Shown one piece after another: positions 5,566-58,149 of a stretch of 64,000 nt of DNA; within the stretch, counting starts at the first letter, position 1, and each line of letters starts with the position of its first letter. A program made the position numbers and the translations under genes. Origin of the DNA: Hydrolagus colliei (lineage: Eukaryota). The DNA is taken from positions 154,504,001 through 154,568,000 of the forward strand of contig CM068742.1 of assembly GCA_035084275.1 (NCBI GenBank). Reading direction: 5' to 3'. A model generated the notes under the pieces. The model had not been told where the DNA came from and made no database searches. It worked only from the letters and a program-made list of their open reading frames with translations.

Positions 5566-6141
5566 TTGTTGTTGTTGAAGTTGTTGAAATGACTGTATAT
5601 TTTTGGGGCGAAACATGGCGGCCAATTATGCACAGCAGTGTCGCACAAACAGTCGGTGGATTGAGTGACCAAACTATTATTTTTTAAATAAATTTTTTGA
5701 AGGGATCATAGCGCTGAGTGAGGAGTGACCACTGGCACAGACATGTTGGGGAGAGAGCAGGGAATAGGATTAGGGTAGAGAACTCTAGAGGGGGGTGCAA
5801 GCACCAGCACAGATCACGGATTCAATAGCCAATTGTTCAGGGCTGAAATGCATTATTAATAATAATAATCCTTGCATTTGGTATAGCTGCTTTTCACATA
5901 TTCGTGACGTCTCAAAGCGCTTCATAGAATATATTGTAAAGTGAATTGACTGTATATTTGCGGGTGAAATGTACCAGCCAATTGTGCGCAATTTGATTCT
6001 TCCTCAATCTCTGTTTATAATAAACTAATAATCTAATCGGCAATTGTCTTTAACAGGAATCTGTTTAGGAACAAGGATCTGTAAAGAAGTGCCTTTCATT
6101 CTGATTTACAGAATAAGGAACAAGGATTTTTTCTCAATCAA

Positions 6142-6285
6142 GAGTTCTGACAAAGGGTCGTGGATCCGAAACGTTGACTCACTTTCCTTTCTCTATAGAT
6201 TTACCTGACCTGCTTAGTTTTCCCAGCAACTTCTGTTTTTGTTTCAGATTTCCAGCATCTGTAGTACGGTATTTTGTGTTTTGTT
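6142..6285 (+). mobile_element. Copy of the hammerhead-bearing repeat (core CTGACAA, mutated)
   Basis: High identity to 25159-25300. Confidence 0.8.
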
Positions 6286-6484
6286 GTTTCTCAATCTCTT
6301 TCTTTTACAAACGTTTAGCCAAGAATTGTCATGAGCAGGAATGTGTTCATCAACCAGGAAAGCCCTTGCGTTCTGAACCACAACTTCCTATTCTTTGCAA
6401 ACTCACAGTTAATTCCCTCTTATACTCACACGCCTCTCAGTAATTATCACTCTATTGGATGCAGGTTCTTATAAGGTTAAGACA

Positions 6485-9976: not shown

Positions 9977-11060
9977 AGGGCTCTGTCCTCGGTCCCCTCC
10001 TTTTCACCCTTTACACGCTCCCTCTGGGCGATGTCATCCGCAGACATGGGGTAAATTTCCACATGTATGCGGACGACACCCAGTTGTACCTTTCTGCCTC
10101 ATCCCTCAACCCCCAGACGATCGATGTTCTGACAGCATGTCTGTCCGACATCGAGTCGTGGACGAGGGACAACTTTTTGCAATTGAACGTGAGTAAGACC
10201 GAGGCCCTCCTGATTGGCTCAAGCCAGCGCCTCCGCACATCGGGCACTGCCAGCCTCAATATCCAAGGCTGTACTCTCCACCTCACAAAGCCAATCAGGA
10301 ACCTCGGCTTCATGTTCGATCAAAAACTTTCCTTCCTCCCCCACATCCGTGCCTTGACCGGCACCGCTTATTTCCACCTGCGCAATATTGCCAGGCTCCG
10401 CAACTATCTTACCCCCCGCGCTGCTGAAACACTCGTGCACGCATACATCACCTCACTGCTGGACTACGGAAATTCTCTCCTCGTCGGCCTCCCCAGTTCC
10501 TCCATTCACAGGCTGCAGGCCATCCAAAACTCTGCAGCCCGTGTACTATCCCGCACCCGCCTCCGCGACCACATAACCCCCACCCTCGCCCGTCTCCACT
10601 GGCTCCCCATCCTCCAGAGGATCGAGTTCAAGATCCTCGTCCTCACCTACAAGGCCTTACACGGCCTTGCCCCGCCCTATTTAACCGATCTACTCTACCC
10701 CTACACGCCCACCCGGACCCTCCGTTCAACAGGACTTGGCCTGCTCCAAGCCCCCCGCCCGAACCGCCCCACCATCGGAGGCCGGGCCTTCAGTTTCTCC
10801 GCTCCCACCCTATGGAATGCCATCCCTCAATCCCTCCGTTTCGTCTCTTCCCTTTCCTCTTTCAAGGCCGGTTTGAAGACATTCCTCTTCAATTGTGCCT
10901 TCTGTTCCACCCCGAACTCTTTTACCTCCCCTTCGTGTTTCACCCCTTCCCAAACACTCCCCTCCCAGCTCGGGTCACACGCCTCCTGTGCAGCGCCTTG
11001 GGACGTCCTCCCGACGTGAAAGGCGCTCTATAAATGTAATTTGTTGTTGTTGTTGTTGTT
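9977..11060 (+). mobile_element. L2 LINE 3' fragment, same young family
   Basis: Open RT C-terminus ([13 protein letters not shown]) to the stop at 11019, then (GTT)n tail. Confidence 0.95.
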
Positions 11061-12519: not shown

Positions 12520-12840
12520 ATAGTCCTGTAGCTCAGTGGTTAGAGCGCTCGTCTTACAAGCGTGAGCCCTGTGTTCGAATGCAGGCAGGTCAGGGCGAAA
12601 CCTTGGGAAAGTTTCCTTACTCCACACACACACACATGCGCCTAATAATAATCCCTCCCCAAAAAAGTAATAAAATTGGTCCACGACTGTTTGTGGGGAC
12701 GCTGCTGTGCACAATTGGCTGCCGTGTTTCACCCACGAATATACAGTCACTTCACTTTAAAATATATTCTATGAAACGCTTTGAGACGTCTAGAAGATTT
12801 GAAAAGCGCTATATCAAATGCAATGATTATTATTATTAAA
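12520..12840 (+). mobile_element. tRNA-derived Deu-domain SINE
   Basis: Full head-core-tail structure. Confidence 0.9.
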
Positions 12841-14795: not shown

Positions 14796-14896
14796 AGCAC
14801 GGATCTGACCAGCACCAGCGGCTATGATAACCTGATCCAGCGCATGACCGATGGGAGGAAGAGCTGTAAAGAGCTGGAGGACTTTATGAAGCAAAG
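14796..14896 (+). CDS. PSTPIP2: PSTPIP2 exon 2 (STDLTSTSGYDNLIQRMTDGRKSCKELEDFMKQR)
   Basis: tttacAG acceptor, GT donor, 101 nt. FCH motif GYD..IQ....GRK.CKE.EDF.K.R. Confidence 0.95.
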
Positions 14897-17800
14897 GTAC
14901 ACTGTGACCGAGCCTTCGGTCTCTATTAGAGTCTTGTAGAGTAATGGTTAGGATGGGGGCAGTCAAAGAGGAAGGTCCTGAGACGGGCTTTGAAGGAGGT
15001 AGAGGAGGGGCGAGGTGGAGGGATTCTAGGATGGAGTTCCCAAGGGTGTGGGCAGATTGACTGAAGGCCTGACCGCCCTAAATAATCTGGGTTTATCTGT
15101 CAATCCCATTTTAAATAACAATAATAATCCTTGCGTTTTGATCTAAGGCCTTGTCACCTCTCGTTCTGACTACTCCAACACCCTCCTCATCGGTTTCCCC
15201 GCCTTTGGAACTCCCTCTATCAATGGCTTTGCCTCGCCTCCTCGTTAGGTCGCGCCTGAAGCCCTTTCTCTTTGATCGCACTTACGGTCACCTTCACCTT
15301 CGGCCTCGGGCTCTGCCATTGTGAACCGCTCTGAGATGCCGCAAATATACAGTCAATTTCCTTTACAATATATTCTGTGAAGCGCTTTGAGGCATCTAGA
15401 AGACATGAAAAACGCTATATCAAATGCAAGGATTATTATTACTATACAAATCCAAGTTGTTGTTCTTGATATAGTGCTTTTCAAGTCTTCTAGTGAAAGT
15501 GAAATTTACTGTAGTTTTATGGGCACAATGCAGGAGCCAATTGCACACAGCAGTGTCCCACAAACAGTCTTGGATTGAAGTGACCAATTTATTATTTTTT
15601 TTCTTGAGGAATTATTATCAGGGTTTGAAGTAAGGAAATTTGCTCAGGGTTTTACCCTGCCTGGAATCGCTTGTTCCCTCCAAATTTCGAAGTGGCCCCT
15701 GAACCTCTGAGAGGGCCTGGTAATAGGATAGATTGGAAAAGGCCAAGGCTTGAGAATCCCGGAGTGTGCCTTGGAATAACTGCTGGAATAAGTCTAACCA
15801 TCTAAAACTGCATAGTTTGCCATTGCTAGAGTTGTCTGGCAAGTTTTCCCATTGCTTGTCCAGCTAGGACCACTCTACCCATTAGGGCTTTTGCTGCTGG
15901 GTTAACAGGCTGAGTAGGAGGATTCCCTGGCCCAGAGACTGGCGTGTCCTTCCAGGATGAGCCAGGATGTACTGTGGATTATGGCATAGGTATGGTGACT
16001 TCAAAACTGCAGGAAGTTAATGATGAACAATTGGTTAAGTATTGGCTGTTTCTAGATCACCAGAGAGTCGGGGAAATCATTGCTTTTTATTTTGCACAGA
16101 GCCCTGCAATTCTACCCACACAGGCTTTGAGCAGAAATGTGCAAACATCATCTAAATTTTATTGCTGAAGCTGTATTTCCAGAGTTCTTGGAAAACAGTA
16201 ACAGACAGACCAACTTCCCAATTTTTAGCTTCAAATGGCCCACGACCTCGTCCATCCACGACGCCATCTCTGGCCTCCTCCCTCCTCAGTCCATTCCAAC
16301 ATCAGTGGGGGGCTTTCAACAACAATAACAACAAAATGACATTTTTAGAGCGCCTTTCACGTTGGGAGGACGTCCCAAGGTGCTGAACAATCAGGTCGGG
16401 ACCCGAGCAGGGGGGAAAGGGTCGTGGAAGGGGAAGGAGAGTAGGAGAGGGGGCAGAGATAGGAGGGAAGCAGAAGGCACGGTCGAAGAGGAAGGTCTTG
16501 AGACCGGCCTTGAAGGAGGAAAGAGAGGAAAGGAAGGCGAAGGGATTGTGGGATGGAGTTCCACAGTGTGGGAGCAGAGAGGCTGAAAGCCCGGCCACCG
16601 ATGGTAGGATGGTTAGGGCGGCGGACACGGCAGGCCAGAGCCTACTGAGCAGAGGGGACGGGCGGACTGATAGGGAGACAATAGGTCGGAGAGATAGGCC
16701 ATTTTGCTACCCTCCACTGCAACTCTCTTCTCTAACAAACAAACAAACAACTTGGATTTATATAGCGCTCTCCATGCCAGACATCTTCAGCCCAACCCCA
16801 CCTCCACCCCTTCCTGTAAGTGATTCTGTAGAGTTGTTTACTGTGGTGGCTAGCTCACTAGCCTTGCAATATTCTGTGTCTGGAGGGGATATGAGAAAGC
16901 CAAAAACAGTTATTAAAAAAGAAAGAGGAAGCTACAACTGGGGTTAAATTGAGAGCCTGTGAAGAAATGCTGAGTATTTGAGACCTGTCAAATAGTCTTC
17001 TGAATATGTTGAAGAACATAAGAAATAGTTGCAGGAGTAGGCCATTCAGCCCCTCGAGTCTGTCCGAATAAGATCATGGCTGATATTCTAACCTAACTCC
17101 ATTCACCCGCCCTAATCCCCCTTTCCCTTAATTCCTCTATTCTTTGGAAATCTATCAATCTCAATCTTGAATATGTTGAAGGACTGAGCATCCGCAGCCT
17201 TCTGGGGAAGAGAATTCCATAAATTCACTCTGAGTGAAGAAAGGTCTCCTCAACTCTGTTTGAAAAGGCTGACCCTTAATCTTGAGATGATGACCCCTAG
17301 TTTTACATTCTCTAACCAGCGGAAATAGTCTCACACTGTCTACCCAGTACTGAAATCTCAGTACTGTAATACGAAATCTCTCCAAATAAAGAAAGAATTT
17401 GGTCCCTCAATCCAGTACAGTTTATGGGACACTGCTGTGCATAATTGGCTGCCGCATTTTACCATCAAAATATACGGTCAATTCACTTTGCAGTATATTC
17501 TGTGAAGACTTGATAATAATAATAATCCTTGCATTTGATAGAATGCTTTTTCGCATCTTCTAGACGTCTCAAAGAGTTTCACAGAAAGTACTGTAAAGTG
17601 AATTGACTATATGTTTGTGGGTGAATCTCGGCAGCCAATTGCGCACAGCAGCGTCCCCACAAACAGTTGTGGATTGAAATTTTATTATTGTGTTTTTTTT
17701 TTAGGCATTATTATAAGGCGCGTGAAAAAGGAAATTTGCCCAACGATTCGTCCTGCCGGGAATAGAACCTAGGTCACTCACTTGCGAGCTATATCATAAG

Positions 17801-18719: not shown

Positions 18720-21470
18720 AACAACAACAACAACAACAATTTACATTTATATAGCGCCTTTCACGTCGGGAGGACGTCCCAAGGCGCTAAACAAGAGGCG
18801 TGTGACCTGAGCTGGGAGGGGAGTGTTTGGGAAGGGGTGAAACATGAAGGGGAGGTAAAAGAGTTCGGGGTGGAACAAAAGGCACGATCGAAGAGGAAAG
18901 TCTTCAAATCGGCCTTGAAAGAGGAAAGGGAAGAGGTGAAACGGAGGGATTGAGGGATGGCATTCCATAAGGTGGGAGCGGAGAAACTGAAGGCCCGGCC
19001 TCCGATGGTGGGGCGGTTCGGGCGGGGGGCTTGGAGCAGGCCAAGTCCTGTTGAACGGAGGGCCCGGGTGGGCGTGTAGGGGGAGAGTAGATCGGCTAGG
19101 TAGGATGGGGCAAGGCCGTGTAAGGCCTTGTAGGTGAGGACGAGGATCTTAAATTCGATCCTCTGGAGGATGAGGAGCCAGTGGAGACGGGCAAGGGTGG
19201 GGGTTATGTGGTCGCGGAGGCGGGTGCGGGATAGTACACGGGCTGCAGAGTTTTGGATGACCTGCAGCCTGTGAATGGAGGAACTGGGGAGGCCGACTAG
19301 GAGAGAGTTTCCGTAGTCCAGCCGTGAGGTGATGTATGCGTGCACGAGTGTTTCAGCAGCGCGGGGGGTAAGATAATTGCGGAGCCTGGCAATGTTGCGC
19401 AGATGGAAATAGGCGGTGCCGGTCAAGGCGCGGATGTGGGGGAGGAAGGAAAGTTTTTGATCGAACATGATGCCGAGGTTCCTGATTGGCTTTGTGAGGT
19501 GGAGAGTGCAGCCTTGGATGTTGAGGCTGGCAGCGCCCGATGTGCGGAGGCGCTGGCTTGAGCCAATCAGGAGGGCCTCGGTCTTACTCACGTTCAATTG
19601 CAAAAAGTTGTCCCTCGTCCACGATTCGATGTCGGACAGACATGCTGTCAGAACATCGATCGTCTGGGGGTTGAGGGATGAGGCAGAAAGGTACAACTGG
19701 GTGTCGTCCGCATACATGTGGAAATTTACCCCATGTCTGCGGATGACGTCGCCCAGAGGGAGCGTGTAAATGGTGAAAAGGAGGGGACCGAGGACAGAGC
19801 CCTGAGGGACGCCATGGGAAACTGTGCGGGGGTTTGATGAAAAGCCATTGGAAGAAACAAAATGTAAACGATGGGTCAAATAAGAGTGGAACCAGTCAAG
19901 GACTGTGCCTTGAAGGTTGAGGTGGGAGGAAAGACGTTGGAGGAGGATGGTGTGATCGACTGTGTCGAACGCAGCAGACAGGTCAAGGAGGACGAGGAGG
20001 CAGAGGTAGCCCTGGTCACAGGCGGTTAGGATGTCATTTGTGACCTTGACCAGGGCAGTTTCTGTGCTGTGGATAGGGCGGAAACCTGATTGGAGGGGTT
20101 CAAAAAGTGAATGAGTTGAAAGGAAAGAGTGGAGCTGGGAGGCAACCACTCTTTCAAGGACCTTGGATAAAAACGGGAGGTTGGAGATGGGTCTATAACT
20201 TGATGGTTGCGACGCATCAAGGGAGGGTTTCTTCAGGATAGGGGTGATGGTGGCTGTTTTAAGGGAGGTAGGGACGGTTCCTGAGGAGAGGGAAAGGTTA
20301 ATGGTGTCAGAAATGAGTGGGGCTAACAAATGGAGCTGGGTGCGGAGGAGGGGGGTGTGGATGGGGTCCAATGAGCACGTGGTGGGTTTCATGGAGGTGA
20401 TTGTTTTTGTGATTGAAAGCGGGGTGGTGGGGTTGAAAGTGTGAAATGGGGGGTGAGTAGGGGTTGAGGTAGCTGATGAGGGCGCTGAGATGGAGGAGTG
20501 GTGGGGGGAGGAAACCGCACAGCGGATTTTCTCAATTTTGGATTCGAGGAAATCCAGCATCTCCTCACAACGAACGTTTGAGGAGAGGATCTGCGAGGTG
20601 AGGCGGGGGGGGGCGGAGGAGCTGGTTGGTGGTGGCGAAGAGGAGGCGGTGGTTGTCCTTCGCTTCCAGGATTATCCTGGAGTAGAAGGCTGATTTGGCG
20701 GTGGCTAGGGCGGAGCGGTAATTTTTGATGCGGTCCAGCCAGATTTGCCGGTGGACCGTGAGGCCAGATTTGAGTCAGGTGCGTTCAACTGCTCTCACTT
20801 GGCTTTTGAGGGAACGGAGGTGAGATGTGTACCACGGTGATGATCGGGAATGGGAGACGGTTTTGGAGGTGAGGGGGGCCAGGGTGTCGAGGGTAGTGGA
20901 GAGGGTGTTGTGGAGGGCGGTGGAGGCGGAGGATGGGTCTGTACAAAAAGAATGCCATTGTGGGAGGAGGTCGGAGGTTTCTAGGGCAGAGGTGAAAGTT
21001 TGAGGGGGAATCTTCTTCCAGGGCCGGTAGAAGATGGTGGTGGGTTTGGAAGTGGAGGTGGGAGGGATAGAGGTGTTGAAAGAAATGAGGAAATGGTCAG
21101 AAATGGCCTTGTCGGTGATGGTGACGCCAGAGACGTTGAGGCCTCGGGTGATCACCAGATCGAGAGGATGGCCATGGGTGTGGGTGGCAGTGTTGATATG
21201 AAGGGAGAAGTTGAAAGACGAAAGTAAAGAGGAAAATTCAGAGGAAATGGGGCAGGAGGGGGTGAAATGGAGGTTGAAATCGCCAAGAATAATAAGGCGA
21301 TCAGAGGAGGCACAAAGGGAAACTAATAGTGAAGAAAAGTCTGAAATGAAAGTGGGGGAGGGTTTGGGGGGGCGATAAACTAATAGGATTTTGAAAGAAC
21401 TGTGGGAGGAGTGAGAAAGGGTGAGATGTTCAAAAGAGGGGAAGGAGCCGGAGGAATAGGGGGATAAGCC
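18720..21470 (-). mobile_element. L2 LINE, 5'-truncated, near-intact ORF2 (APE C-terminal part plus RT)
   Basis: 599-aa ORF 18761-20560 with [13 protein letters not shown] and YADDTQLY. Upstream frame has APE motifs (YRPP, LGDFN, TH..GHPLDL), with a TGG>TGA stop at ~20775. Tail ends in (GTT)n. Inserted into a SINE. Confidence 0.95.
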
Positions 21471-21919: not shown

Positions 21920-23045
21920 CATAGAATCATAGAATTTTACGGCACAAAAGGAGGCCATTCGGCCCATCTAGTCTGTGCCGGCTCTTTGAAAAGAGCGATT
22001 CAATCCCATTGCCCTGCCCGCTCCCCATAGCCTAATAGACCAGTTCTTCCTAAATAAAAATCTAATTCCCTTTTAAAAGTTGTTATCGAATCAGCCTCCA
22101 CCACCTTTTCAGGCAATGCATTCCAGATTCGAACAACTCGCTGAGTGAAAAAATTTCTCCTCAGCTCCCCTCTACTGCGCCTTGAAACTATTTTAAATCT
22201 GTGACCACGAGTCACAGATTCACCCACGAGTGGAAATAGTTTTTCTCTATTTGCCCTGTCGAAACCCCTCATGATCTTATAAACCTCTATTAGGTCTCCC
22301 CTCAATCTTCTCTGCTCCAGAGAGAATAACCCTAGCCTATCTAGCCTCTCCTCATAGCTGAAGTCCCTCAATCCTGGCACCATCCTAGTAAATCTTCGTT
22401 GTACCCTTTCCAATGCCTTCACATCCTTTCTGTAGTGTGGTGACCAGAATTGAACACAGTATTCCAGCTGAGGCCTCACCAAAGTTTTATAGAGGTTAGT
22501 CAGCACTTCCTGACTTTTGTACTCTATACCCCTATTTATAAAGCCTAGTATCCCATATGCCTTCTTAACAGCCTTGTCTACCTGTCCTGCCACCTTCAAC
22601 GAGTCACTAACACAAATCCCCAGGTCTCTCTGTTCCTTCACACCATTTAAAATTGTACTATCTAGCCTAGATTGCCTCCCTTCATTTCTTCTCCCAAAAT
22701 GCATCACCTCACACTTCTCTGCATTAAACTTCATCTGCCATGTGTCTGCCCACTTTACCAATTTGTCTATATCCTCTTGCAGATGGCTACTATCCTCCTC
22801 ACTGTTTACTATTCTCCCTAACTTAGTGTCATCTGCAAACTTGGAAACTGTACTCCGTACACCCAAGTCCAGATCATTGATGTAGATTACAAAGAGCAAT
22901 GGTCCCAAAACCGATCCCTGTGGCACACCACTGCTCACTTCCCTCCAATCTGAAAAACAGCCGCTCACTACAACTCTCTGCTTTCTGTCTCGCAGCCAGT
23001 TGTGGATCCACGCTGCCACTGTCCCTTTTACGCCATGGGCCTTTA
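21920..23045 (-). mobile_element. CR1 LINE 3' portion
   Basis: ORF 22000-23190 with [51 protein letters not shown]. 3' end (TTCTATGA)n. Confidence 0.93.
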
Positions 23046-24949
23046 ATTTTGTCCTCCTCAAATACCCATCTACTTCCCTCTTAAAATTCGTAATTGAATC
23101 AGCTTCCACTACCCTTTTAGGCAATGTATTCCAGATTACCAACAACTCACTGGGTGACATTTTCCCCTCTACCTCTGTTTCTTGTAACAACTATGTGAAA
23201 TCAGTGTCCTTGGGTTACTGACCCACTTGCCAGTGGAAAGAGTTTTTCCCAGTTCAACCTACCAATCCCCCTCATGATCTTGAAAATCTCCATTAAATCC
23301 CCTCTTAACCTTCTCTGCTCTTGGGAGAATAATCCTAGTTTCGCTAACCTCTCCTCATAACTAAGGTCCTTTATTCCTGGAACCCTCCTTTGTACCCTGT
23401 CCAATGTCTTAACATCTTTCCTAAAGTGTGGTGCCCAGAACTGAACACAGGCTCCAACTGAGGCCTTTTTTAAACAGTTTTATCTACTTTTCCTGCCACC
23501 TTCAGAGATTTGCTTATATGGAACCCCAGGTCTCTCGAATTCAAGATCCTCTAGGCCCTTCAAGGCCCTTCATGGCCTTTCCCCTCCACATCGCCGACCT
23601 CCGACTATGAACCTCCCGTCCCCTCTGTTCAGTGGGCTCCAGACTGCTCCATGTCCCCTGTCCGACCTGCCTTTCAGCCTCTCTACCCTCAAACTGTGGA
23701 AATCCATCCCGCAGAACCTTCGCCTAGCACCCTCCCTTGCCTCCTTGAAGGCTGGTCTTCTCTTCAACTGTGCCTTCTGCTGTCCTCCCAACTCTCTCCC
23801 TCCCCTCCTAACTCTCTCCTACTCATTCCCCCCTACCCTGCCCCTCTCCCTTGCTCGGGTCCCGACCTGATTGATCAGCATCCTCTTGACATGAAAGACG
23901 CTCTATAAATGTAATTTTGTTGTTATTGTAATTACCGACTCACTGACCAGTAGAAATAATTCCTGCCAGTTTCCATCTTCCCTGCTGCCTCCCCATTAAC
24001 CCTTCCTATTCCCTACCTCCCTCACATGGAGGTGTCTGTGAGGGGATGGGATAGAAGAAGAATATAACTACTAGCGGGGATCAGTGGGGTCTATTTCTGT
24101 GTGGGAACAGTATGAATTTGTATGAGGCTAAATCTGCTTGTCAGGCCTCCTCTCGGCCCCCTCTGTGTTTCCGCAGACTCTGCTCCTAGGTTACGCAGCT
24201 CAGGCTGTGTTATTGTGTGGAGGATTGGAGGGGTGGGGAGGTAGGGAGTTGGTGTGCCTGAACTCTGAATTTGGCGAGGAATGTCACGGGTTTCAGTGAC
24301 GGAGTTTGCTAATCCGCCTGAAGCTAATCTGCCAACGTCGAAGGGCTTTCTCATGCGTATTTATTTATACAGCAGATTTTCGAGCTTCAACATCCTTGTT
24401 CTCATCTATAAAGCCCTCCAGGCCTTGGCCCTCCTCACCTCCTCACAATGACTTGCTAACCTCATACCTATCTGTAGCTCATACCACCTCCTCTCAGTGG
24501 GCTCCTGCCTGCTCCACATCACCCTGCTTTGCCCACCCCACCATTGGTGGTTTGACCTTCAGCCTCTCTGCCCCCACCCTTTAGGACTCCCTCCCTGAGG
24601 CCCCCTCCCTTGCCTCCTTCAAGGCCCATCTCAAGACCTTCCTTCTCGGCCATGCCTTCGGTCCCACCTTGATTATACATGGTCACCCCCATCTGAGATG
24701 AGGGGAATTTTAGGTTTTAATCTGTTTCCCTTTGGTACAGTCCTATTGTTCACTACAGCCCCTCCCCGCATTGTGTTACTGCTCGTGTTAATGTAGGCAA
24801 CTAGGGGGGCAGGGAAGCGGAGAGTATTACAGTGAGAGAGGGAGGGGGAGTAACAGGATATCCTGTTAGTTACAGATATGTGATGGGGGAAGGTGTGTGG
24901 AGGATGGGGGAGAGAGAGAACAGCCTAGCTGTTACAGGAGTCCTGAAGC

Positions 24950-25390
24950 CCAGTGGTTAGAGCACTCGCCTTACAAGCGAGAGACCTGGGTTCAATTCCC
25001 AGGGCAAAAGCTTGGGTAAGTTTCCTTTCACCACACGCCTGCTAATAATCCTACCAAAAATATATAATTTGGTCACACAATTCACGACCGTTTCTGGGAC
25101 ACTGCTGTGTGTAAAATGGTTGCCACGTTTTGCCCACAAAATATACAGTCAATTCACTGTCCAGTTCTGACGAAGGGTCGCGGACCCGAAACGTTGACTC
25201 ACTTTCCTTTCTCCATGGATGCTGCCTGACCTGCTGAGTTTTCCCAGCAACTTCTGTTTTTGTTTCAGATTTCCAGTGTCTGTAGTATTTTGTGTTTTGT
25301 TTCACTTTGCAGTATATTCTGTGAAGCGCTTTGAGACGTCTAGAAGATGTGGAAAGTGCTATATCAAATGCAAGGATTATTATTATTGTA
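24950..25390 (+). mobile_element. Deu-domain SINE interrupted by the hammerhead repeat
   Basis: The SINE is continuous once 25159-25306 is removed. Confidence 0.88.
25159..25300 (+). mobile_element. Penelope-derived 142-bp repeat with intact minimal hammerhead core, TTCACT target-site duplication
   Basis: CTGACGA-a-GGGTC/GACCC-GAAACGTT, flanked by TTCACT at 25153-25158 and 25301-25306 within a SINE. Confidence 0.75.
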
Positions 25391-26074
25391 ATTAAGCCGA
25401 CAAGTAAAACCTCTACAAAAAAAAACAGAACCTACTATTCCTTTCTCCCTCATGTACCTACCTAGCTTCCCCTTAAATAAATCAATTCGCCTCAGTAGCT
25501 ACTTGTGGTTGTGAGTTCCACATTCTCAACACACTCTGCGTGAGGAAATGTCTTGTACTTGATCTATTTATGCCCCTGGTTTTGGTCTCCACAAGTAAAA
25601 ATATCTTTCCCATGTCACCCCCCCCATCAAAACATTTCCTAATTTTAAAGATCTCTATCAGCTCACCGCTTAACCTGTGGTTTTAAAGAGAAAAAAAGAT
25701 TTCGAGCTTGTTTCCTGATCGGTTTAAAAATCTCTCATTTGTGGGAGGCTCTCCTTCGTACCTTCTCCAGTGCGTCTGTATCCCTTCTATGATGTGGGGA
25801 CCAGAACTGCACACAGTATTCTACCACAACAACTTGGATTTATGTAGTGCCCTCACTGCACACTGGGGCCGAGCCAGAGGGGGAGGGGAAAAAAGGTGAC
25901 CTAAAGCGCAAAAAGAAAGGTCTTAGCCGAGACGTGAGAGTAGGAAGAGAGCGGGCGCGAGGCAAAGGGATGAAGAAGGGAGTTCCAGAGACTCGGGGGC
26001 TGAAGGCACGGCCTTCAAAAGATTCCAAGCTTGTTCAGCCTCGGGGTGTATATTTCCACGGTGTGTATAATAAT

Positions 26075-26410: not shown

Positions 26411-26625
26411 GCTCCACAAAATATGGCACGACTCACAAATTTGCATGTCACCCTTGTTCCTCCTACCAAAATCACATTTTTCTACATTGAAATGCATTTG
26501 CCATTGAAATGCATTTGCCATTGAAATGCCCATTCAGCAAGTTTATTAATGTCTTGCTCTAACTTGTTGCTGTCCTCCTCTGTATTAACTATTCCCCCCA
26601 CAACTTGTGTGTCTCTTGGATCCAG

Positions 26626-26700
26626 GGCCAGCATTGAGGAGCGATACGGGAAGGATTTGGTGTCTCTGTCAAAGAAAGTGTGCGGGCAGAATGAACTCAA
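26626..26700 (+). CDS. PSTPIP2: PSTPIP2 exon 3 (ASIEERYGKDLVSLSKKVCGQNELN)
   Basis: tccAG/GTGAGT, 75 nt, phase 2 to phase 2. Matches A.IEERYGKDL..LS.K.CGQ.E.N. Confidence 0.95.
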
Positions 26701-27335: not shown

Positions 27336-27854
27336 GTAAGTATCTGTTGACCTGATCTGCTTTGAGTATGAGGAACTTCTGATTGCTTTGCTCAGCGCTT
27401 TGACAGTGTATTTCCTCCTGTGATTACGAGAGGCTCTGGTTAGGGAAACACTATCTTCTGCTCTTAACTTCCTTCTAGTTAGACCTTTGAAATGTCGGCC
27501 AATAATTCTCTGCCTGTGTTTGTGACTGGCTTATCCAATGGTCTGTTCCCTGGGCTGGTGAGTGCCTGATAAGCTCCTGAGTGAACTCTGCCATAGCCGA
27601 GCCCTTTCCTCTCGCTATCTCCCCCCAGGCCTCTGCCTCCACCTGCTCCCTTCTCCTGTAGCTCAGTGGATAGAGCACTCGCCTTACAAGCTTGAGACTT
27701 GTGTTCGAATCCAGGCAGAAATCAGCTTGTGGAGGGAAGCCTTGGCATGTCCTCTCCCACACCAGGCCCTGTGACCCCATCACTCCAACCCTCACCCGGC
27801 TCCACTGACTTCCCATCCCCCATAGAGTTCAAACTCCTCGCCTTCATAGCCTCT

Positions 27855-28178
27855 GTAGCTCAGTGGTTAGAGCGCTCGTCTTACAAGCGTGAGACCTGTG
27901 TTCGAATCCAGGCAGGTCAGGGCCAAACCTTGGGCAAGTTCCCTTACTCCACACACCTAATAATAATCTGTCCAAAAAAACCCCACAATAATAAAATTGG
28001 TCATTTTCAATCCATGACTGTTTGTGGGTCAGGGATGTTGCTGTGCGCAATTGGCTGCTGCGTTTCGCCCACAAAATATACAGTCAATTCACTTTATAGT
28101 ATATTCTGTGAAGCGCTTTGAGACGTCGATAAGATATGAAAAGCCCTATTTCAAGTGCAAGGATTATTATTATTATTA
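27855..28178 (+). mobile_element. tRNA-derived Deu-domain SINE
   Basis: Full copy. Confidence 0.9.
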
Positions 28179-29576: not shown

Positions 29577-30334
29577 AACAACAACAACAACAACAATTTA
29601 CATTTATATAGCGCCTTTCACGTCGGGAGGACGTCCCAAGGCGCTGCACAGGAGGCATGTGACCCGAGCTGGGAGGGGAGTGTTTGGGAAGGGGTGAAAC
29701 ACGAAGGGGAGGTAAAAGAGTTCGGGGTGGAACAAAAGGCACGATCGAAGAGGAAAGTCTTCAAATCGGCCTTGAAAGAGGAAAGGGAAGAGGCGAAACG
29801 GAGGGATTGAGGGATGGCATTCCATAAGGTGGGAGCGGAGAAACTGAAGGCCCGGCCTCCAATGGTGGGGCAGTTCGGGCGGGGGGCTTGGAGCAGGCCA
29901 AGTCCTGTTGAACGGAGGGTCTGGGTGGGCGTATAGGGGGAGAGTAGATTGGTTAGGTAGGATGGGGCAAGGCCGTGTAAGGCCTTTTAGGTGAGGACGA
30001 GGATCTTAAACTCGATCCTCTGGAGGATGGGGAGCCAGTGGAGACGGGCGAGGGTGGGGGTTATGTGGTCGCGGAGGCGGGTGCGGAATAGTACACGGGC
30101 TGCAGAGTTTTGGATGGCCTGCAGCCTGTGAATGGAGGAACTGAGGAGGCCGACGAGGAGAGAATTTCCGTAGTCCAGCCGTGAGGTGATGTATGCGTGC
30201 ACGAGTGTTTCGGCAGCGCGGGGGGTAAGATAGTTGCGGAGCCTGGCAATGTTGCGCAGATGGAAATAGGCGGTGCCGGTCAAGGTGCGGATGTGGGGGA
30301 GGAAGGAAAGTTTTTGATCGAACATGATGCCGAG
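29577..30334 (-). mobile_element. L2 LINE 3' fragment, same young family
   Basis: Near-identical to 18720-19480. Confidence 0.93.
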
Positions 30335-32045: not shown

Positions 32046-32890
32046 TCCTTGATCATTGTTGCTTCAAAATGATGAGCTTACACAGTGGAGTTCACACTGA
32101 CCCGATGGCTTGGGAGGATGTGTCAAATCGCTCACTGCTGCTTGGCTCGAACCCAAGTGTCAAATTTCCAAAGATCACAGGCAACACATTTTTGCAGGAT
32201 ATCCTTTAGTTTGCTTACTTCCTGAAGCTTTTTATTTTGGTTTATTTTCTCTTATTTAATTCTCTCTGAGCCGAGGAGAGAAGGGTTGGGTGGGGGGGGG
32301 GGGGGGGGGGGGGTAGTGGTCTATCCTGGGATCTCATACGTCCGTGGCTGTCACCCTATGAGCCCCACCTTCTTCCGTTCAGCGGGTTCCGGCCTGCTCC
32401 ACCAGATCCGCCCTACCATCGGTAAACAATATATAGTCAATTCACTTTACAGTATACTGTGTGAAGCACTTTGAGACACCTTAAAGACGTGATAAGTTGC
32501 TTTGCGCCTTGGCATGTCCTCCCGACGTGAAGCGCGCTCTATAAATGTAATTTTGTTGTTGTTAGATGCCTGGTGTAAGGATTATTATTATTACTTATCC
32601 GAGTCCCATTTAGTTTCCTATCAAAACCACTTATGATTTCTCTATCGCTGCTGTGCACAATTGGCTGCTGCGATTCGTCCACAAATATACAGTCAATTCA
32701 CTTTACAGTCTATTCTGTGAAGCGCATTGAGACACAGTCTAGAGGACGTGAAAAGCTCTGTATCAAATGCCAGGATCATTATTATTATGACCCATGACCT
32801 ATTTGCTACTCATTCCAGCTGTTGAATATTATTGCACATGCGCAAGTTATTAAACTATGTAACGTTAAACATTGTGATCGTTTACTGCAG

Positions 32891-32989
32891 TCAAAGAAGA
32901 CATACGAGCAGAAATGTAAAGACAAGGATGAGGCTGAGCAGCAGCTGAACAGAAATGCTGGATTAGGCAACAATAAACATATGGAAAAG
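32891..32989 (+). CDS. PSTPIP2: PSTPIP2 exon 7 (SKKTYEQKCKDKDEAEQQLNRNAGLGNNKHMEK)
   Basis: ctgcAG/GT, 99 nt. Family motif KK.YEQKC.DKDEAEQ. Confidence 0.95.
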
Positions 32990-33444
32990 GTGATAGCTAC
33001 CCCTCTAACCGCTGTGCGTGTCTAAACTCTGTGTGTCTTTCCCCAATTACCCCAGTCCTTGCCAGACTGCGCTGGCTCCCTGTCCCAGAGAGGATCGATT
33101 TCAAGATCCTCACGCTTGTATTTAAATCCCTCCACTCCCCTGCACCTTCCCCCCTATCTCTCTGACCTCCTCTCTCCTCACAGCAGCTCCCGTTGCCTTC
33201 GCTCCTCTGGGTCTGGCCTCCTCCATGTCCCCTCCGCTCCACCCTCGGCGGCCGTGCCTTCGGCCACTACCCCCCGAGGCTCTGGAACTCTGTTCCTCAC
33301 TCCCTTCACCTCGCTCCCCTCACCCCCGCTTCCCAGTTTCAGGTCTCAGCTAAAGACCTTCTCTTCGACCGCGCCTTTGGTCACCTTGCTCCCCGCCTCC
33401 CTCTGGACAACCTCCCGGTGTGACTAGTTCTGTCTCTGTTCCAG

Positions 33445-33490
33445 CTGCAAAGCAAAGCGCACCAGAGTAAGCAAGTGGCGGATGAGGCTG
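33445..33490 (+). CDS. PSTPIP2: PSTPIP2 exon 8 (LQSKAHQSKQVADEA)
   Basis: ttccAG/GTGAGT, 46 nt. Phase 0 to 1 fits exons 7 and 9. Confidence 0.88.
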
Positions 33491-33887
33491 GTGAGTGTGT
33501 GTGTGGGGGGGGGGGGGGTGATGTTGTTGGGGTGAGTGGAGGTAGTGGGGGCTGTTGGAGGAGGGTGTGGGGGTGGGGTGAATGTGGAGATGGGAGGCGA
33601 GGAATGTTGGAGGAATGGGAGGTTCGGGTGTGCAGGTGATGGGGATGTTGGAGCAGGGTGTGGTGGGGGGATCGGTGGTGGCTTGTGGGTGGTGATACAC
33701 ACTTTGGGTGGGGGGGGGATGTGGGTCTGTGGATGGATTGGGGGGGGAAGTGGGACAGGGCTGTGGGAGTGACTTGCTCTCCACCCTCACCACCAAGTCA
33801 GGCGACTGACGTGTGTGAACTCTTCTCCCTCCAAACACCCTCTCCCCACCCCCACCTCCACCCCCCTTTCCTGCCCTCTTCACATAG

Positions 33888-33967
33888 ATCGAATCTACTC
33901 TCAGAACATTGGGAGCCTAGAGAAGATCCAGAAGGACTGGGAGGTGGAGCACATCAAGACCTGTGAG
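33888..33967 (+). CDS. PSTPIP2: PSTPIP2 exon 9 (DRIYSQNIGSLEKIQKDWEVEHIKTCE)
   Basis: cacatAG/GTACG, 80 nt. Motif L.K....W..EHIK.CE. Confidence 0.95.
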
Positions 33968-34414
33968 GTACGAGCCACCTACTGTAAACAACAACATGGA
34001 TTTACGCCATGTTGCGCCCGTCACGGTGGGCAGTGTCTCGGAGCTGGACACCGAGTCCGGGGGAATGGGGATGGGATGTTGGGGGAGAGGGGAGGTGACT
34101 CTAAGCTCGGCCAAAGAGGAAGGTCTTTAGGTTATCATCTGGATATGGAGGAGGAGGGGACAAGGCAGAAGGGATTTAGAGAGAAAGAGTTCCATAGTTT
34201 GGGACACTGTGGCTGAAAGCATGGCCACTCGAAGCTGGGGTGGATGGTACGAGGGACAAACAGGAGGCCAGAGGCAGCTGAGCGGAGGCAGCGGGTAATG
34301 TACTGGGAGGTTAGGAGATATCCATCACATTCATAACACACGTGTCTGCCCCCTTTAATATTAAAGGTACTGGGTGCAAATCCCACAATCAATATGCAGA
34401 TAGATACAAAACAG

Positions 34415-35561: not shown

Positions 35562-37896
35562 GCCCTCCACCTCCAAACCCACCACCATCTTTTACCGGCC
35601 CTGGAAGAAGATTCCCCCTCAAACTTTCACCTCTGCCCTCGAAACCTCCGACCTCCTCCCACAGTGGCATTCTTTTTGCACCGACCCATCCTCCGCCTCC
35701 ACCACCCTCCACAACACCCTCTCCACTACCCTCGACACCCTGGCCCCCCTCACCTCCAAAACCGTCTCCCATTCCCGATCATCACCGTGGTACACAACTC
35801 ACCTCCGTTCCCTCAAAAGCCAAGTGAGAGCAGTTGAACGCACCTGGCTCAAATCTGGCCTCACGGTCCAACGCACCGGCAAATCTGGCTGGACCACATC
35901 AAATTTTCCCGCTCCGCCCTAGCCACCGCCAAATCAGCCTTCTACTCCAGGATAATCCTGGAAGCGAAGGACAACCACCGCCTCCTCTTCGCCACCACCA
36001 ACCAGCTCCTCCGCTCCCCCCGCCTCACCTCGCAGATCCTCTCCTCTAACGATCGCTGTGAGGAGATGTTGGACTTCCTCGAGTCCAAAATAGAGAGAAT
36101 CCGCTCCGCGGTTTCCTCCCCCCATCTCTCCTCCACCTCCGCCCCTCCATCCGTTACCTCAACCCCCACCCACCCCCCATTTCATACTTTCAACCCCACC
36201 ACCCCATCTTTAATCACAAAAATAATCACCTCCATGAAACCCACCACGTGCTCATTGGACCCCATCCCCACCCCCCTTCTCCACACCCAGCTCCACCTTT
36301 TGGCCCCGTTCATTTCTGACACCATTAACCTTTCCCTCTCCTCAGGCACCATCTCTACCTCCCTTAAAACCGCCACCATCACCCCTATCCTGAAGAAACC
36401 CTCCCTTGATGCGTCGCAACCATCAAGTTAACGACCCATCTCCAACCTCCTGTTTTTATCCAAGGTCCTTCAAAGACTGGTTGCCTCCCAGCTCCGCTCT
36501 TTCCTTTCAACTCACTCACTCCTTGAACCCCTCCAATCAGGTTTCTGCCCAATTCACAGCACAGAAACTGCCCTGGTCAAGGTCACAAATGACATCCTAA
36601 CCGCCTGTGACCAGGGCTCCCTCTGCCTCCTCGTCCTCCTTGACCTGTCTGCTGCGTTCGACACAGTCAATCACACCATCCTCCTTCAACGTCTTTCCTC
36701 CCACCTCAACCTTCAAGGCACAGTCCTTGACTGGTTCCATTCTTATTTGACCCACCGTTTACATTTTGTATCTTCCAATGGTTTTTCCTCAAACCCCCGC
36801 ACAGTTTCTCACGGCGTTCCTCAGGGCTCTGTCCTCGGTCCCCTCCTTTTCACCCTTTACACGCTCCCTCTGGGCGATGTCATCCCCAAACATGGGGTAA
36901 ATTTCCACATGTATGTGGACGACACACAGTTGTACCTTTCTGCCTCATCCCTCAACCCCCAGACGATCAATGTTCTGACAGCATGTCTGTCCGACATCGA
37001 ATCGTGGACGAGGGACAACTTTTTGCAATTGAACGTGAGTAAGACCGAGGCCCTCCTGATTGGCTCAAGCCAGCGCCTCCGCACATCGGGCGCTGCCAGC
37101 CTCAACATCCAAGGCTGCACTCTCCACCTCACAAAGCCAATCAGGAACCTCGGCATCACGTTTGACTAAAAACTCTCCTTCCTCCCCCACATCCGCGCCT
37201 TGACCGGCACCGCTTATTTCCACCTGCGCAACATTGCCAGGCTCCGAAACTATCTTACCCCCCGCGCTGCCGAAACACTCTTGCACGCATACATCACCTC
37301 ACGGCTGGACTACGGAAACTTTCTCCTCATCGGCCTCCCCCAGTACCTCCATTCACAGGCTGCAGGCCATCCAAAACTCTGCAGCCCGTGTACTATCCCG
37401 CACCCGCCTCCGCGACCACATAACCCCCACCCTCGCCCGTCTCCACTGGCTCCCCATCCTCCAGAGGATCGAATTCAAGATCCTCGTCCTCACCTTCAAG
37501 GCCTTACACGGCCTTGCCCCACCCTATTTAGATCTACTCTCCCCCTACACGCCCACCCAGACCCTTCATTCAACAGGACTTGGCCTGCTCCAAGCCCCCC
37601 GCCCGAACCGCCCCACCATCGGAGGCCGGGCCTTCAGTTTCTCCGCTCCCACCCTATGGAATGCCATCCCCCAATCCCTCCGTCTCGTTTCTTCCCTTTC
37701 CTCTTTCAAGGGCGGCTTGAAGACTTTCCTCTTCGATCGTGCCTTTTGTTCCACTCCGAACTCTTTTACCTCCCCTTCGTGTTTCACCCCTTCCCAAACA
37801 CTCCCCTCCCAGCTCGGGTCACACGCCTCCTGTGCAGCGCCTTGGGACGTCCTCCCGACGTGAAAGGCGCTCTATAAGTGTAATTTGTTGTTGTTG
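35562..37896 (+). mobile_element. L2 LINE, 5'-truncated, with stops and frameshifts
   Basis: Colinear with the reverse complement of 18720-21060. Stop at ~36430, further lesions at ~37169 and ~37340, YVDD instead of YADD. Confidence 0.95.
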
Positions 37897-37944
37897 TCTC
37901 TCCCTCCCTGTTAATCCTTAAAAGCCTCTCCCTCCCAACATACG

Positions 37945-38090
37945 CTCAGTTCTGATGAAGGCTCGTGGACCAGAAACATTGACTCACTTTTCCTCTCTCT
38001 CCATAGAGGCTGCCTGATCTGCTGAGTGTTTCAAACGGTTTCTGTTTGTGTTTCATATTTTCAGCAGCTGCAGTCTTATGCGATTTTGCA
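37945..38090 (+). mobile_element. Diverged copy of the hammerhead-bearing repeat
   Basis: CTGATGAAGGCTCGTGGACCAGAAACATTGACTC followed by the same downstream body. Confidence 0.75.
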
Positions 38091-38292
38091 AGAATTATGA
38101 TTATTTCTCACTCACTCGTTCCCTTTCACACCCGCTCTACCACACGCTCACGTTCTCTCACACACTCTCTCTCTCTCTGGTAATGAGACGCAACTGAGTA
38201 CTGTATGATCCAGGAAGTGAAACCTTTTGCCAGCTTTTGAGCTGAGGATTCTATCCGTTCCTCCTTTCCTTAATCCTCCTCATCCTCCTCAG

Positions 38293-38389
38293 CTGTACGA
38301 AGAGATCCGGAAGATTCTGGAACAGTGCAACATTCAAAAGGACTTGGATTTCTACATAGACTTGAAGAGGACTGGTGACACACTCCCAG
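38293..38389 (+). CDS. PSTPIP2: PSTPIP2 exon 11 (LYEEIRKILEQCNIQKDLDFYIDLKRTGDTLP)
   Basis: ctcAG/GTACC, 97 nt. Motif YE..RK.LE.C.IQ.D...F......TG..P. Confidence 0.95.
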
Positions 38390-39004
38390 GTACCCGTCCC
38401 CTCTCCCCGCTCCCCTCTCAGCAACAACAGCTCGGGTTTATATAGGGCCCTCCCTCACTCCACTCTGGACGCCGTCTCAGAGCGCTTCCCGATAACGGAT
38501 CCCGAGCCAGGGGGGAGGGGGAAGAAGGTGACCAAAGGTGCGGTCGAAAAAAATGTCGTTATCTGAGACCTGAAAGTAGGAAGACAAGAGTGGGCGAAGA
38601 GAAGGGAGCGAGAGGGAGTTCCAGAACCTCGGGGCCTAGTGGCTGAAGGCACGGCCGCTGATGGTGGAGAGGAATGACTCGGGGGACAAGGAGGAGGCCA
38701 GAGGAGGGAGAGCGAAGGCAATGGGTACTGTTGTGAGGAGAGCAGTCAGAGAAGTGGTGATGGGGGACGGGGGTGGGGGTGTAAGGCAGTAGGAGAGGTA
38801 GGGAGAGCATGCAATGATTTGTAAACGAGTGTGAGGATCTTGAAGTCCATCCATTCTGTGATAAGGGAGCCAGTGGAGCCTGGTGAGGGCCGGGGTGATT
38901 GAGATACAGAATTTAGTGTGGGTGAGAATGGGGGGCAAGAGGTTTTCTGAAATTCCAACAACCACTGAACTCGCATGAGAGTGATTATGTGTGAGAGTGT
39001 GGAG

Positions 39005-39315
39005 ATCCTGTAGCTCAGTGGTTAGAGCACTCACCTTACAAGCGTGAGACTTTATTTTCGAATCCAGGCAGATCAGGGCAAAATCTTAGGCAAGTTTCCT
39101 TACGTAATAATAATCCATAAAAAAAAACACACAATAATAAAAACTGATCATTTCAACCCACGGCTGTTTGTGGGGACACTGCTTTGCGCAATTGGCTGTC
39201 GCGTTTCGCCCACAAATATACAGTCACTTCACTTTACAGTATATTCTGTGAAGCGTTTTGAGACGTCGATAAGATGTGAAAAGCACGATCTCAAATGCAA
39301 GGATTATTATTATTT
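39005..39315 (+). mobile_element. tRNA-derived Deu-domain SINE
   Basis: Full copy. Confidence 0.9.
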
Positions 39316-50935: not shown

Positions 50936-51000
50936 CAGGTATCACTTGTTTGCTTTTATATTGTGTTCTGGTTCACATTACACCATGTGTGTCCTCACAG

Positions 51001-57650: not shown

Positions 57651-57784
57651 GAAATTTGTAGTTCTTGTTGAATCTAAGCTGAATTTTTTAACAATCTTTT
57701 TTTCTTCTTCTTACAATGGGTATCCCAAAATTGTCCACATTACTCACAGCTGTGACCTAGCCAAAGCTCTTGTACAAGCCTCAA

Positions 57785-57915
57785 AACTCAGAATACTACA
57801 GATGCTGCAAATCTGATACAAAAACAGAATATGCTGGGAACACTCAGCAGGTCAGGCAGCATCTATGGAGAAAGGAAAGTGTGTCCATGTTTTGGGTCCA
57901 CCACCCTTTGTCAGA
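57785..57915 (-). mobile_element. Diverged antisense copy of the hammerhead-bearing repeat
   Basis: Reverse complement reads CTGACAAAGGGTGGTGGACCCAAAAC..., with the same body. Confidence 0.72.
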
Positions 57916-58149
57916 AGTGGGGCATGTTGGGAGGGAGAGGCTATGGTGAACCAGCTTGCCTTTCCCTTCCCAATCTTCTGTGACCATCTGGTCTGCCTGT
58001 TCTTTTGCACTTTCATCTCCGCTTTGTTTAACGTTATTAACACGTCTTCTCTTCAGTAAACACCTCTCTTCTACAAATCCTGTAGCCCTAGTTGAAGGCT
58101 ACACCTGCCATCACCCCTCCCCACCCTAACCAATGCGGTGGCAGGATGA

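What the first reader, a model, noticed from the sequence alone, without database searches (positions are those of the whole stretch)
25159..25306. Minimal hammerhead ribozyme in a 142-bp Penelope-derived insertion with a 6-bp TSD
Seen: CUGACGA (25167-73), one extra A, stem II GGGUC/GACCC, GAAA (25188-91), then C-G-U-U. Stem III is the loop-less palindrome ACGU with a predicted cleavage site after U25195, and stem I is AGUU/GACU. The unit sits inside a SINE flanked by duplicated TTCACT, so it moved as a discrete piece. Known: Penelope-like elements carry minimal type I hammerheads with palindromic stem III, thought to cleave as dimers. Inference: a very short mobile ribozyme cassette (a truncated PLE end or retrozyme-like unit) in sense orientation within a PSTPIP2 intron.
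Basis: partly seen in the sequence, partly recalled or inferred. Interest (0 to 1): 0.7.

Follow-up and report, generated by a model that had tools for sequence, protein, structure and literature searches.

The report
Solo Penelope-type hammerhead repeat copy
A 142-bp retrotransposon fragment carrying an intact copy of the small hammerhead-ribozyme motif typical of Penelope-like elements sits in a SINE inside a PSTPIP-family intron of a chimaera; it is real, but it is an ordinary member of a well-described class and is probably catalytically idle on its own.

Summary
At 25163-25199 (+) the sequence reads AGUU-CUGACGA-A-GGGUC(GCG)GACCC-GAAA-CGU-U|GACU. A generic minimal-hammerhead descriptor finds it once in the window and never in 300 shuffles. 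The 142-bp unit (25159-25300) is a true insertion with a 6-bp TTCACT duplication: 15 other copies of the host tRNA-derived SINE read straight through the empty site. It lies, in sense, in an intron of a PSTPIP-family gene.

It belongs to a dispersed repeat with four copies in the window. Only this copy keeps the core. The others lost it mainly by CpG decay, with no compensatory changes, so the copies decay neutrally.

The motif has every published hallmark of metazoan Penelope-like-element minimal hammerheads: a nucleotide between A9 and G10.1, a G10.1-C11.1 pair, loop-less palindromic ACGU and a 4-bp helix I. Its architecture matches the tested Poseidon_Ac ribozyme. It is solo, with no tandem partner, so it is expected to be inactive.

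No Penelope ORF lies in the window, so the parent link is inferred.

The scan has flagged such copies elsewhere in this genome.

One detail is mildly unexpected: the short and long copies each share a 5' end, which suggests discrete units.

The parts
25153..25158 (+). Left copy of the target-site duplication, TTCACT
   Evidence: present once in 15 empty-site SINE copies, twice here
25159..25300 (+). 142-bp insert: short-form copy (A) of the hammerhead-bearing repeat family
   Evidence: the flanks are contiguous in other SINE copies; homologous to copies at 6140-6286, 57782-57942 and 37923-38088
25163..25166 (+). Helix I, 5' strand (AGUU)
25167..25173 (+). Core box C3-A9 (CUGACGA)
25174..25174 (+). 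Unpaired A between A9 and G10.1, a hallmark of PLE min-HHRs
   Evidence: feature described in PMC4209133
25175..25187 (+). Helix II hairpin GGGUC-GCG-GACCC, with the G10.1-C11.1 pair
   Evidence: forms in every predicted fold
25188..25191 (+). Core box G12 A13 A14 A15.1 (GAAA)
25191..25194 (+). Loop-less palindrome ACGU (15.1, 15.2, 16.2, 16.1). It can form helix III only with a second copy
   Evidence: dimer model evaluated
25195..25195 (+). U17; the predicted scissile bond is 3' of this base
   Evidence: inference from hammerhead numbering; not tested
25196..25199 (+). Helix I, 3' strand (GACU)
25200..25300 (+). 3' tail of the repeat, ending ..UUUUGUGUUUUGU. All four copies share this 3' terminus, which is the presumed reverse-transcription start region
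   Evidence: the role is inferred by analogy to PMC11167929
25301..25306 (+). Right copy of the target-site duplication, TTCACT
24930..25400 (+). Host tRNA-derived SINE, interrupted by the insert; tRNA-like head at 24947-25002
6140..6286 (+). Family copy D (short form), with 10-bp TSD TTTCTCAATC at 6130-6139 and 6287-6296. Core G8 is changed to A, and one stem II pair is changed to G.U
57782..57942 (-). Family copy C (long form, about 26 nt more at the 5' end). G8 and G12 are changed to A and the helix III CG is lost
37923..38088 (+). Family copy B (long form, the oldest at about 78% identity). Stem II has two mismatches and helix III CG is changed to CA
14799..14906 (+). Upstream PSTPIP-family exon (matches PSTPIP1 F-BAR residues 17-52)
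   Evidence: E 6e-8
26615..26698 (+). Next PSTPIP-family exon (matches PSTPIP1 residues 46-73). The insert lies in the intron between this exon and the previous one
   Evidence: E 0.0065

Best explanation
The 142-bp unit is a dead retrocopy of the 3'-terminal, hammerhead-bearing region of a Penelope-like element or of a short non-autonomous element that uses Penelope machinery. It was reverse-transcribed from an uncleaved RNA: the copy contains the whole ribozyme on both sides of the predicted cut site. It inserted by endonuclease nicking and target-primed reverse transcription into a tRNA-derived SINE, which produced a 6-bp duplication (inferred mechanism). The insertion site lies in an intron of a PSTPIP-family gene, in the sense orientation. 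The motif is a type-I minimal hammerhead whose helix III is only the self-complementary ACGU. It can therefore reach an active fold only by pairing with a second copy, with stems I swapped between the two, and probably with help from the element's protein. In the parent element such ribozymes sit in the repeated ends (pLTRs). They are thought to process tandem transcripts, although they are not needed for insertion in vitro. Here the copy is solo, so the most likely state is that it does nothing in the host. It keeps an intact core only because it is the youngest of the four local copies, with about 2% private changes and all five CpGs retained.
For: The motif is present and non-random. The insertion and TSD are proven by 15 empty sites. 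The repeat is a dispersed family of four copies with a common 3' end and differing 5' ends. Copy D has its own 10-bp TSD. All published min-HHR hallmarks are met (PMC4209133). The architecture matches Poseidon_Ac: CUGAGGA-U-stem II-GAAA-CGUC. The activity of that ribozyme depends on C3/G8 and on protein. In both cases the hammerhead lies about 100-200 nt upstream of the insertion's 3' end (searches compared). Sister copies decay at CpGs without compensation. There is no tandem partner. Published single min-HHRs show no detectable cleavage. The active folds are disfavoured in silico: -8.8 against -11.4 kcal/mol for the monomer, and -15.7 against -22.8 or -30.9 kcal/mol for the dimer.
Against: No Penelope RT/GIY-YIG ORF is in the window. 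All RT ORFs there are LINE-type, so parentage rests on the ribozyme type and the insertion style. Rfam hammerhead models give no hit. With four copies, no covariation test is possible. The 5' ends cluster: A and D start 8 and 7 nt before C3, while B and C both start at AGCCUCUCCC. This is not what random 5' truncation of a kilobase-long element predicts.
Confidence: 0.78

Rival explanations
1. The family is a discrete, SINE-like non-autonomous element rather than a randomly 5'-truncated Penelope tail. It has two forms: about 142 nt starting at the foot of helix I, and about 165 nt starting about 26 nt further upstream. Each is copied full-length from its own short transcript, for example one started at a promoter in a pLTR. 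The hammerhead is a passenger or recognition module next to the RT-priming tail.
For: A and D start within 1 nt of each other, and B and C start at the same base. A and D also share subfamily-specific substitutions. An earlier follow-up on other DNA of this genome reported that short copies all start at the same base. Non-autonomous PLE derivatives that share 3' ends are documented (PMC8557442; the 2026 preprint).
Against: There are only two copies per form. The boundaries of B and C have no convincing TSD: the 8-mer match for C would arise by chance about 1 time in 7. A preferred RT stop or a template end could give the same pattern. This rival differs from the best explanation only in the nature of the source RNA.
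Confidence: 0.35
2. The intact intronic hammerhead is functional for the host. It cleaves the PSTPIP pre-mRNA in cis, or pairs with transcripts of other copies, and so modulates expression, as proposed for conserved intronic hammerheads of amniotes.
For: It lies in the sense orientation in an intron, and its core and all five CpGs are intact.
Against: Helix III cannot form in a monomer. The nearest same-strand copies are 19 kb and 12.7 kb away and have damaged cores. Single min-HHRs are inactive in vitro. The intactness is explained by youth, about 2% private changes. No orthologue comparison was possible.
Confidence: 0.04
3. The hammerhead resemblance is a coincidence in a repeat that has no ribozyme history.
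For: There is no Rfam hit. Three of the four copies lack an intact core. Overall folding is not unusual, z = 0.24.
Against: There were 0 hits in 300 shuffles for a generic descriptor. Features outside the descriptor also match: G10.1-C11.1 and the same bulge and loop-less ACGU as in Poseidon_Ac. The differences in sister copies are CpG-type decay away from the intact state. Several other hammerhead-bearing Penelope-type inserts were noted in the same genome.
Confidence: 0.04

Closest known systems
Minimal type-I hammerheads of metazoan Penelope-like elements (Cervera & de la Pena 2014, PMC4209133; dimer cleavage in Lunse et al. 2016/17, as cited in PMC6765202)
   Same: CUGANGA and GAAA boxes, an unpaired nucleotide between A9 and G10.1, a G10.1-C11.1 pair, palindromic 15.2-16.2 with no loop 3, a helix I of 4-5 bp without a defined loop 1, mostly solo genome-wide copies attributed to truncated PLEs, and presence in fishes, coelacanth, amphibians and reptiles.
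   Different: Helix II here is 5 bp, whereas 6-8 bp were reported for several families. The host is a holocephalan, which is not listed in that paper. The parent ORF was not seen here.
Poseidon_Ac (PAc) hammerhead of Anolis carolinensis (Frangieh et al. 2024, PMC11167929)
   Same: Identical layout: CUGAGGA-U-6-bp stem II-GAAA-CGU-C, as read. The ribozyme lies upstream of the internal RT start sites that define the insertion's 3' end. The inserted copies derive from uncleaved RNA.
   Different: In PAc the ORF's AUG overlaps A9-bulge-G10.1. Here the equivalent triplet is AAG and the frame closes after about 19 codons. The distance from the cut site to the 3' end is 105 nt here and about 145-205 nt in PAc. 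There is no sequence similarity outside the core.
Animal non-LTR retrozymes (Cervera & de la Pena 2020, PMC7229834; Li et al. 2026 preprint)
   Same: Short non-coding units with type-I hammerheads, related to PLE pLTRs. 'Monomer' derivatives are dispersed in genomes, including in introns.
   Different: Retrozymes are defined by tandem units that yield circular RNAs. This copy and its three relatives are solo, TSD-flanked insertions, and their termini do not coincide with the cleavage site.
Sm-alpha / Sj-alpha SINE-like hammerhead retroposons of Schistosoma
   Same: A short interspersed element that carries a hammerhead.
   Different: Those elements have their own pol III-type promoter region and a canonical hammerhead with loops. 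Here the tRNA-like head belongs to the unrelated host SINE, not to the hammerhead unit.

Membership tests
PLE-type minimal hammerhead (min-HHR) | Conserved core boxes CUGANGA and GAAA in type-I order, followed by U-H at the cleavage site | tested here: met
   CUGACGA 25167-73, GAAA 25188-91, U16.1 25194, U17 25195
PLE-type minimal hammerhead (min-HHR) | One unpaired nucleotide between A9 and G10.1 | tested here: met
   A25174; criterion from PMC4209133
PLE-type minimal hammerhead (min-HHR) | G10.1-C11.1 pair closing helix II | tested here: met
   G25175-C25187
PLE-type minimal hammerhead (min-HHR) | Palindromic 15.2-16.2 with a minimal or absent loop 3, so that helix III forms only in a dimer | tested here: met
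   ACGU 25191-94, loop-less. The dimer pairing scheme is nestable and was evaluated
PLE-type minimal hammerhead (min-HHR) | Core conserved, and helix II covarying, across family copies | tested here: inconclusive
   Only four copies. Three have decayed cores, and stem II shows one G.U-compatible change and three disruptive changes, with no compensatory pair. This is expected for dead copies and is too few for a test
PLE-type minimal hammerhead (min-HHR) | Self-cleavage as a dimer or with the element's protein | not testable with these tools
Penelope-like element (insertion of) | Sequence continuous with, or forming the pLTR of, an element that encodes a telomerase-like RT plus a GIY-YIG endonuclease | tested here: inconclusive
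   No such ORF is in the window. The RT ORFs at 18761-20560, 9874-11019 and 22000-23190 are LINE-type.
Penelope-like element (insertion of) | Fixed 3' terminus, variable 5' extent, short TSD of variable length | tested here: met
   Common ..UUUUG 3' end; 5' ends at two positions; TSDs of 6 bp (A) and 10 bp (D)
Animal non-LTR retrozyme | Head-to-tail tandem units, each with a hammerhead | tested here: not met
   No tandem repeat at 24500-26000. The four copies are dispersed
Rfam hammerhead families (Hammerhead_1, _3, _II, HH9, HH10) | Score at or above the gathering threshold | tested here: not met
   No hit at gathering score nor at E<=10 on 25100-25350. These models include a helix III hairpin that min-HHRs lack

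The most novel reading that the evidence does not exclude
The chimaera genome may hold a family of very small (about 142 and about 165 nt) discrete, SINE-like elements. Each would consist only of a minimal hammerhead at the extreme 5' end plus a roughly 100-nt Penelope RT-priming tail, copied full-length from short dedicated transcripts. That would be among the smallest PLE parasites and would place the ribozyme at a defined RNA terminus rather than inside a pLTR.
Probability: 0.3. Interest if true: 0.4.

Novelty: new member of a known kind. Interest (0 to 1): 0.22.

Why it matters
The finding adds a holocephalan example to the known spread of Penelope-type minimal hammerheads in vertebrates. 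It gives a clean case, with the empty site documented 15 times, of such a unit inserting as a discrete TSD-flanked piece copied from uncleaved RNA. That agrees with the in-vitro result that ribozyme cleavage is not needed for PLE insertion. The clustered 5' ends, if they hold genome-wide, would bear on how short non-autonomous PLE derivatives (retrozyme 'monomers') arise. For the host gene there is no sign of any consequence.

Tried and rejected
1. Rfam cmscan, at gathering score and at E<=10, gave no hammerhead hit. I treat this as uninformative for min-HHRs.

2. I looked for a Penelope ORF in the window. All RT ORFs are LINE-type, with no GIY-YIG domain.

3. I tried to collect more family copies in three ways:
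- The antisense open frame of the repeat was used as a protein query and found nothing.
- The LINE ORF is not on record for contig look-up.
- Its homologues are mostly teleost. The nearest are Callorhinchus milii proteins at 76-81% identity, with no contigs attached.
No further chimaera DNA was therefore obtained.

5. Literature searches for the repeat's 17-mer, and for Penelope + Callorhinchus + hammerhead, gave nothing. Lunse et al. is not held.

6. nhmmer with the family profile found only the four copies. Weak hits (E>0.2) inside tRNA-SINE bodies were dismissed as chance.

7. A candidate 8-bp TSD for copy C (GGTCACAG) was judged unreliable, with about a 1-in-7 chance expectation.

8. The idea that the short copies derive from hammerhead-cleaved RNA was rejected. 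Cleavage would leave a 5' end at G25196, whereas A and D start upstream of the whole ribozyme.

9. The idea that they derive from spliced RNA was rejected, because A keeps the ..CAG that precedes helix I.

Full report
OBSERVATION

On the + strand the motif reads:
- AGUU (25163-66)
- CUGACGA (25167-73)
- an extra A (25174)
- GGGUC-GCG-GACCC (25175-87)
- GAAA (25188-91)
- C-G-U-U (25192-95)
- GACU (25196-99)

In hammerhead numbering this gives C3-A9, an unpaired base, helix II closed by G10.1-C11.1, and G12-A14. It then gives A15.1-C15.2-G16.2-U16.1 as a loop-less palindrome, U17 as the cleavage-site base, and a 4-bp helix I that includes one U.G pair.

The exact pattern occurs once in the window against 0.01 expected. 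A generic descriptor that I wrote finds this site alone in the window. The descriptor asks for CUGANGA, an optional bulge, a helix II of 4-8 bp with a 3-8-nt loop, GAA, A + palindrome + U, a non-G base, and a helix I of at least 4 bp. It finds nothing in 300 dinucleotide-preserving shuffles.

Rfam 15 reports no hammerhead, either at gathering score or at E<=10 on 25100-25350. This does not count against the motif, because the curated models include a helix III hairpin that this class lacks.

INSERTION

The unit sits in a tRNA-derived SINE, whose tRNA-like head is at 24947-25002 (46 bits). That SINE has some 40 copies in this 64-kb window. The flank ending at 25158 and the flank starting at 25307 are contiguous in at least 14 of those copies. 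Fifteen of them, printed side by side, read ..CAGTCAATTCACT|TTACAG.. with TTCACT present once.

The filled site is ..TTCACT[142 bp]TTCACT... The finding's 148 bp is therefore 142 bp of insert (25159-25300) plus one 6-bp target-site duplication.

FAMILY

BLAST and a profile search find four copies in the window:
- A (this one).
- D, 6140-6286 (+), with its own 10-bp TSD TTTCTCAATC.
- C, 57782-57942 (-).
- B, 37923-38088 (+).

All four end at the same ..UUUUG 3' terminus, and the hammerhead is on the sense strand of the unit. This is what a retroelement primed at a fixed 3' site looks like.

The copies fall into two forms. A and D share diagnostic substitutions and start 8 and 7 nt upstream of C3. 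B and C both start about 26 nt further upstream, at AGCCUCUCCCUCCCAACAU.

Only A has an intact core.
- D has G8 changed to A, and one helix II pair changed to G.U.
- C has G8 and G12 changed to A, a broken loop-closing pair, and has lost the helix III CG.
- B has two helix II mismatches and ACAU in place of ACGU.

Nearly all of these are CpG transitions away from A's state, and none is compensatory. The hammerhead segment is not better conserved than the tail: C is 78% identical there against 87% overall. The copies therefore decay neutrally after insertion. A is simply the youngest, with about three private changes in 142 nt and all five CpGs kept.

The observed pattern neither supports nor refutes a ribozyme in the source element.

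FOLDING

As a monomer, the 48-nt core region prefers a rod in which GACG of the core pairs with CGUU (-11.4 kcal/mol). The helix I + helix II arrangement scores -8.8 kcal/mol. The whole 142-nt unit is not unusually stable, z = 0.24.

A double hammerhead is sterically nestable. In that arrangement helix I is swapped between the two copies, helix II is intramolecular, and helix III is the ACGU/ACGU duplex. It scores -15.7 kcal/mol, against -22.8 for two inactive monomers and -30.9 for a fully extended duplex.

These numbers ignore tertiary contacts. They agree with published work: single min-HHRs show no detectable cleavage, dimers or trimers cleave weakly, and the Anolis Poseidon hammerhead cleaves only when its protein is present.

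There is no tandem repeat at the locus. The nearest same-strand copies are 19 kb and 12.7 kb away and have damaged cores. No partner in cis exists.

COMPARISON WITH WHAT IS KNOWN

Cervera & de la Pena (PMC4209133) list features that emerged beyond their search descriptor for metazoan PLE min-HHRs:
- a conserved G10.1-C11.1 pair;
- palindromic 15.2-16.2.

They also describe a helix I of 4-5 bp. All of these are met here.

The Poseidon_Ac consensus is printed in the supplement of PMC11167929. Across its unit junction it reads CUGAGGA-U-GCCUGC..GUGGGC-GAAA-CGU-C, which is the same architecture as here, including the bulge and the loop-less ACGU.

In that element RT starts internally, about 145-205 nt downstream of the cut site, and the inserted copies come from uncleaved RNA. 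Here the 3' end lies 105 nt downstream of the predicted cut. Copies A and D contain the entire ribozyme, so they too were copied from uncleaved RNA.

Frequent 5' truncation and non-autonomous derivatives that share 3' ends are described for PLEs (PMC8557442). A 2026 preprint relates vertebrate 'retrozyme' units and their solo monomers to PLE pLTRs, including in one chondrichthyan.

WHAT IS NOT SHOWN

No Penelope RT/GIY-YIG ORF is in the window. The three RT-bearing ORFs are LINE-type by Pfam, by PDB matches to LINE-1 ORF2p and R2, by Atlas neighbours that carry Exo_endo_phos, and by database homologues. Parentage is therefore inferred from the ribozyme type and the insertion style.

HOST CONTEXT

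Three open segments on the + strand match the PSTPIP1 F-BAR structure colinearly:
- 14799-14906, residues 17-52, E 6e-8;
- 26615-26698, residues 46-73, E 0.0065;
- 32876-32989, residues 138-175, E 6.5e-6.

Whether the gene is PSTPIP2 rather than PSTPIP1 was not tested. The neighbouring Siglec-15-like genes fit PSTPIP2 by synteny as I recall it from human 18q21. That is a lead only.

Earlier notes call the genome a chimaera. The nearest database relatives of the window's LINE protein are from Callorhinchus milii at 76-81% identity, which is consistent with a holocephalan.

VERDICT

The scan has already flagged several Penelope-type hammerhead inserts on other DNA of this genome. One earlier follow-up reached the same conclusion and noted that short copies start at the same base. 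I see the same tendency here: A and D start within 1 nt of each other, and B and C start at the same base. The sample is only two copies per form.

This is a new member of a known kind. Interest is low, and a little higher only if the clustered 5' ends prove to mark discrete mini-elements.

Noticed in passing
window 37923-37949 and 57942-57916 (- strand): In the two long-form copies, the roughly 26 nt just upstream of helix I read as a polypyrimidine run followed by CAG (..CCUCUCCCUCCCAACAUnCnCnCAG|UUCUGA). This looks like a 3' splice acceptor. In Drosophila virilis Penelope an intron ends exactly at the 5' end of helix I (PMC4209133). Copy A keeps the CAG, so it was not copied from a spliced RNA.
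   Followed up: partly
window-wide; e.g. 8460-8785, 12522-12837, 27853-28174, 39001-39314, 50618-50936: A tRNA-derived SINE of about 320 bp, with a conserved ..CTGTGAAGCGCTTTGAGAC.. tail, has about 40 full or partial copies in 64 kb. 54% of the window matches something else within the window.
   Followed up: partly
window 18727-20560 (-), 10054-11053 (+), 36900-37897 (+), 29584-30334 (-): A young LINE family whose copies are 94-95% identical over 1 kb, with a 599-aa open RT ORF at 18761-20560. The nearest database proteins are from Callorhinchus milii at 76-81% identity; the other close hits are teleost 'jockey-like' RTs at about 50-58% identity. Copy B of the hammerhead repeat lies 25 nt from the 3' end of one LINE copy. 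The other LINE copies are not followed by the repeat, so this looks coincidental.
   Followed up: partly
window 14799-14906, 26615-26698, 32876-32989, about 38290-38390 (+): Colinear exons of a PSTPIP-family F-BAR gene on the + strand. The segment near 38.3 kb (..LYEEIRKILEQCNIQKDLDFYIDLKRTG..) looks like a further exon but was not checked against a structure.
   Followed up: partly
window 33353-33916, both strands: A long stop-free, proline/histidine/threonine-rich low-complexity stretch, open in several frames. It lies beside a segment (33773-34213 +) containing ..IGSLEKIQKDWEVEHIKTCE.., which may be another PSTPIP exon.
   Followed up: no
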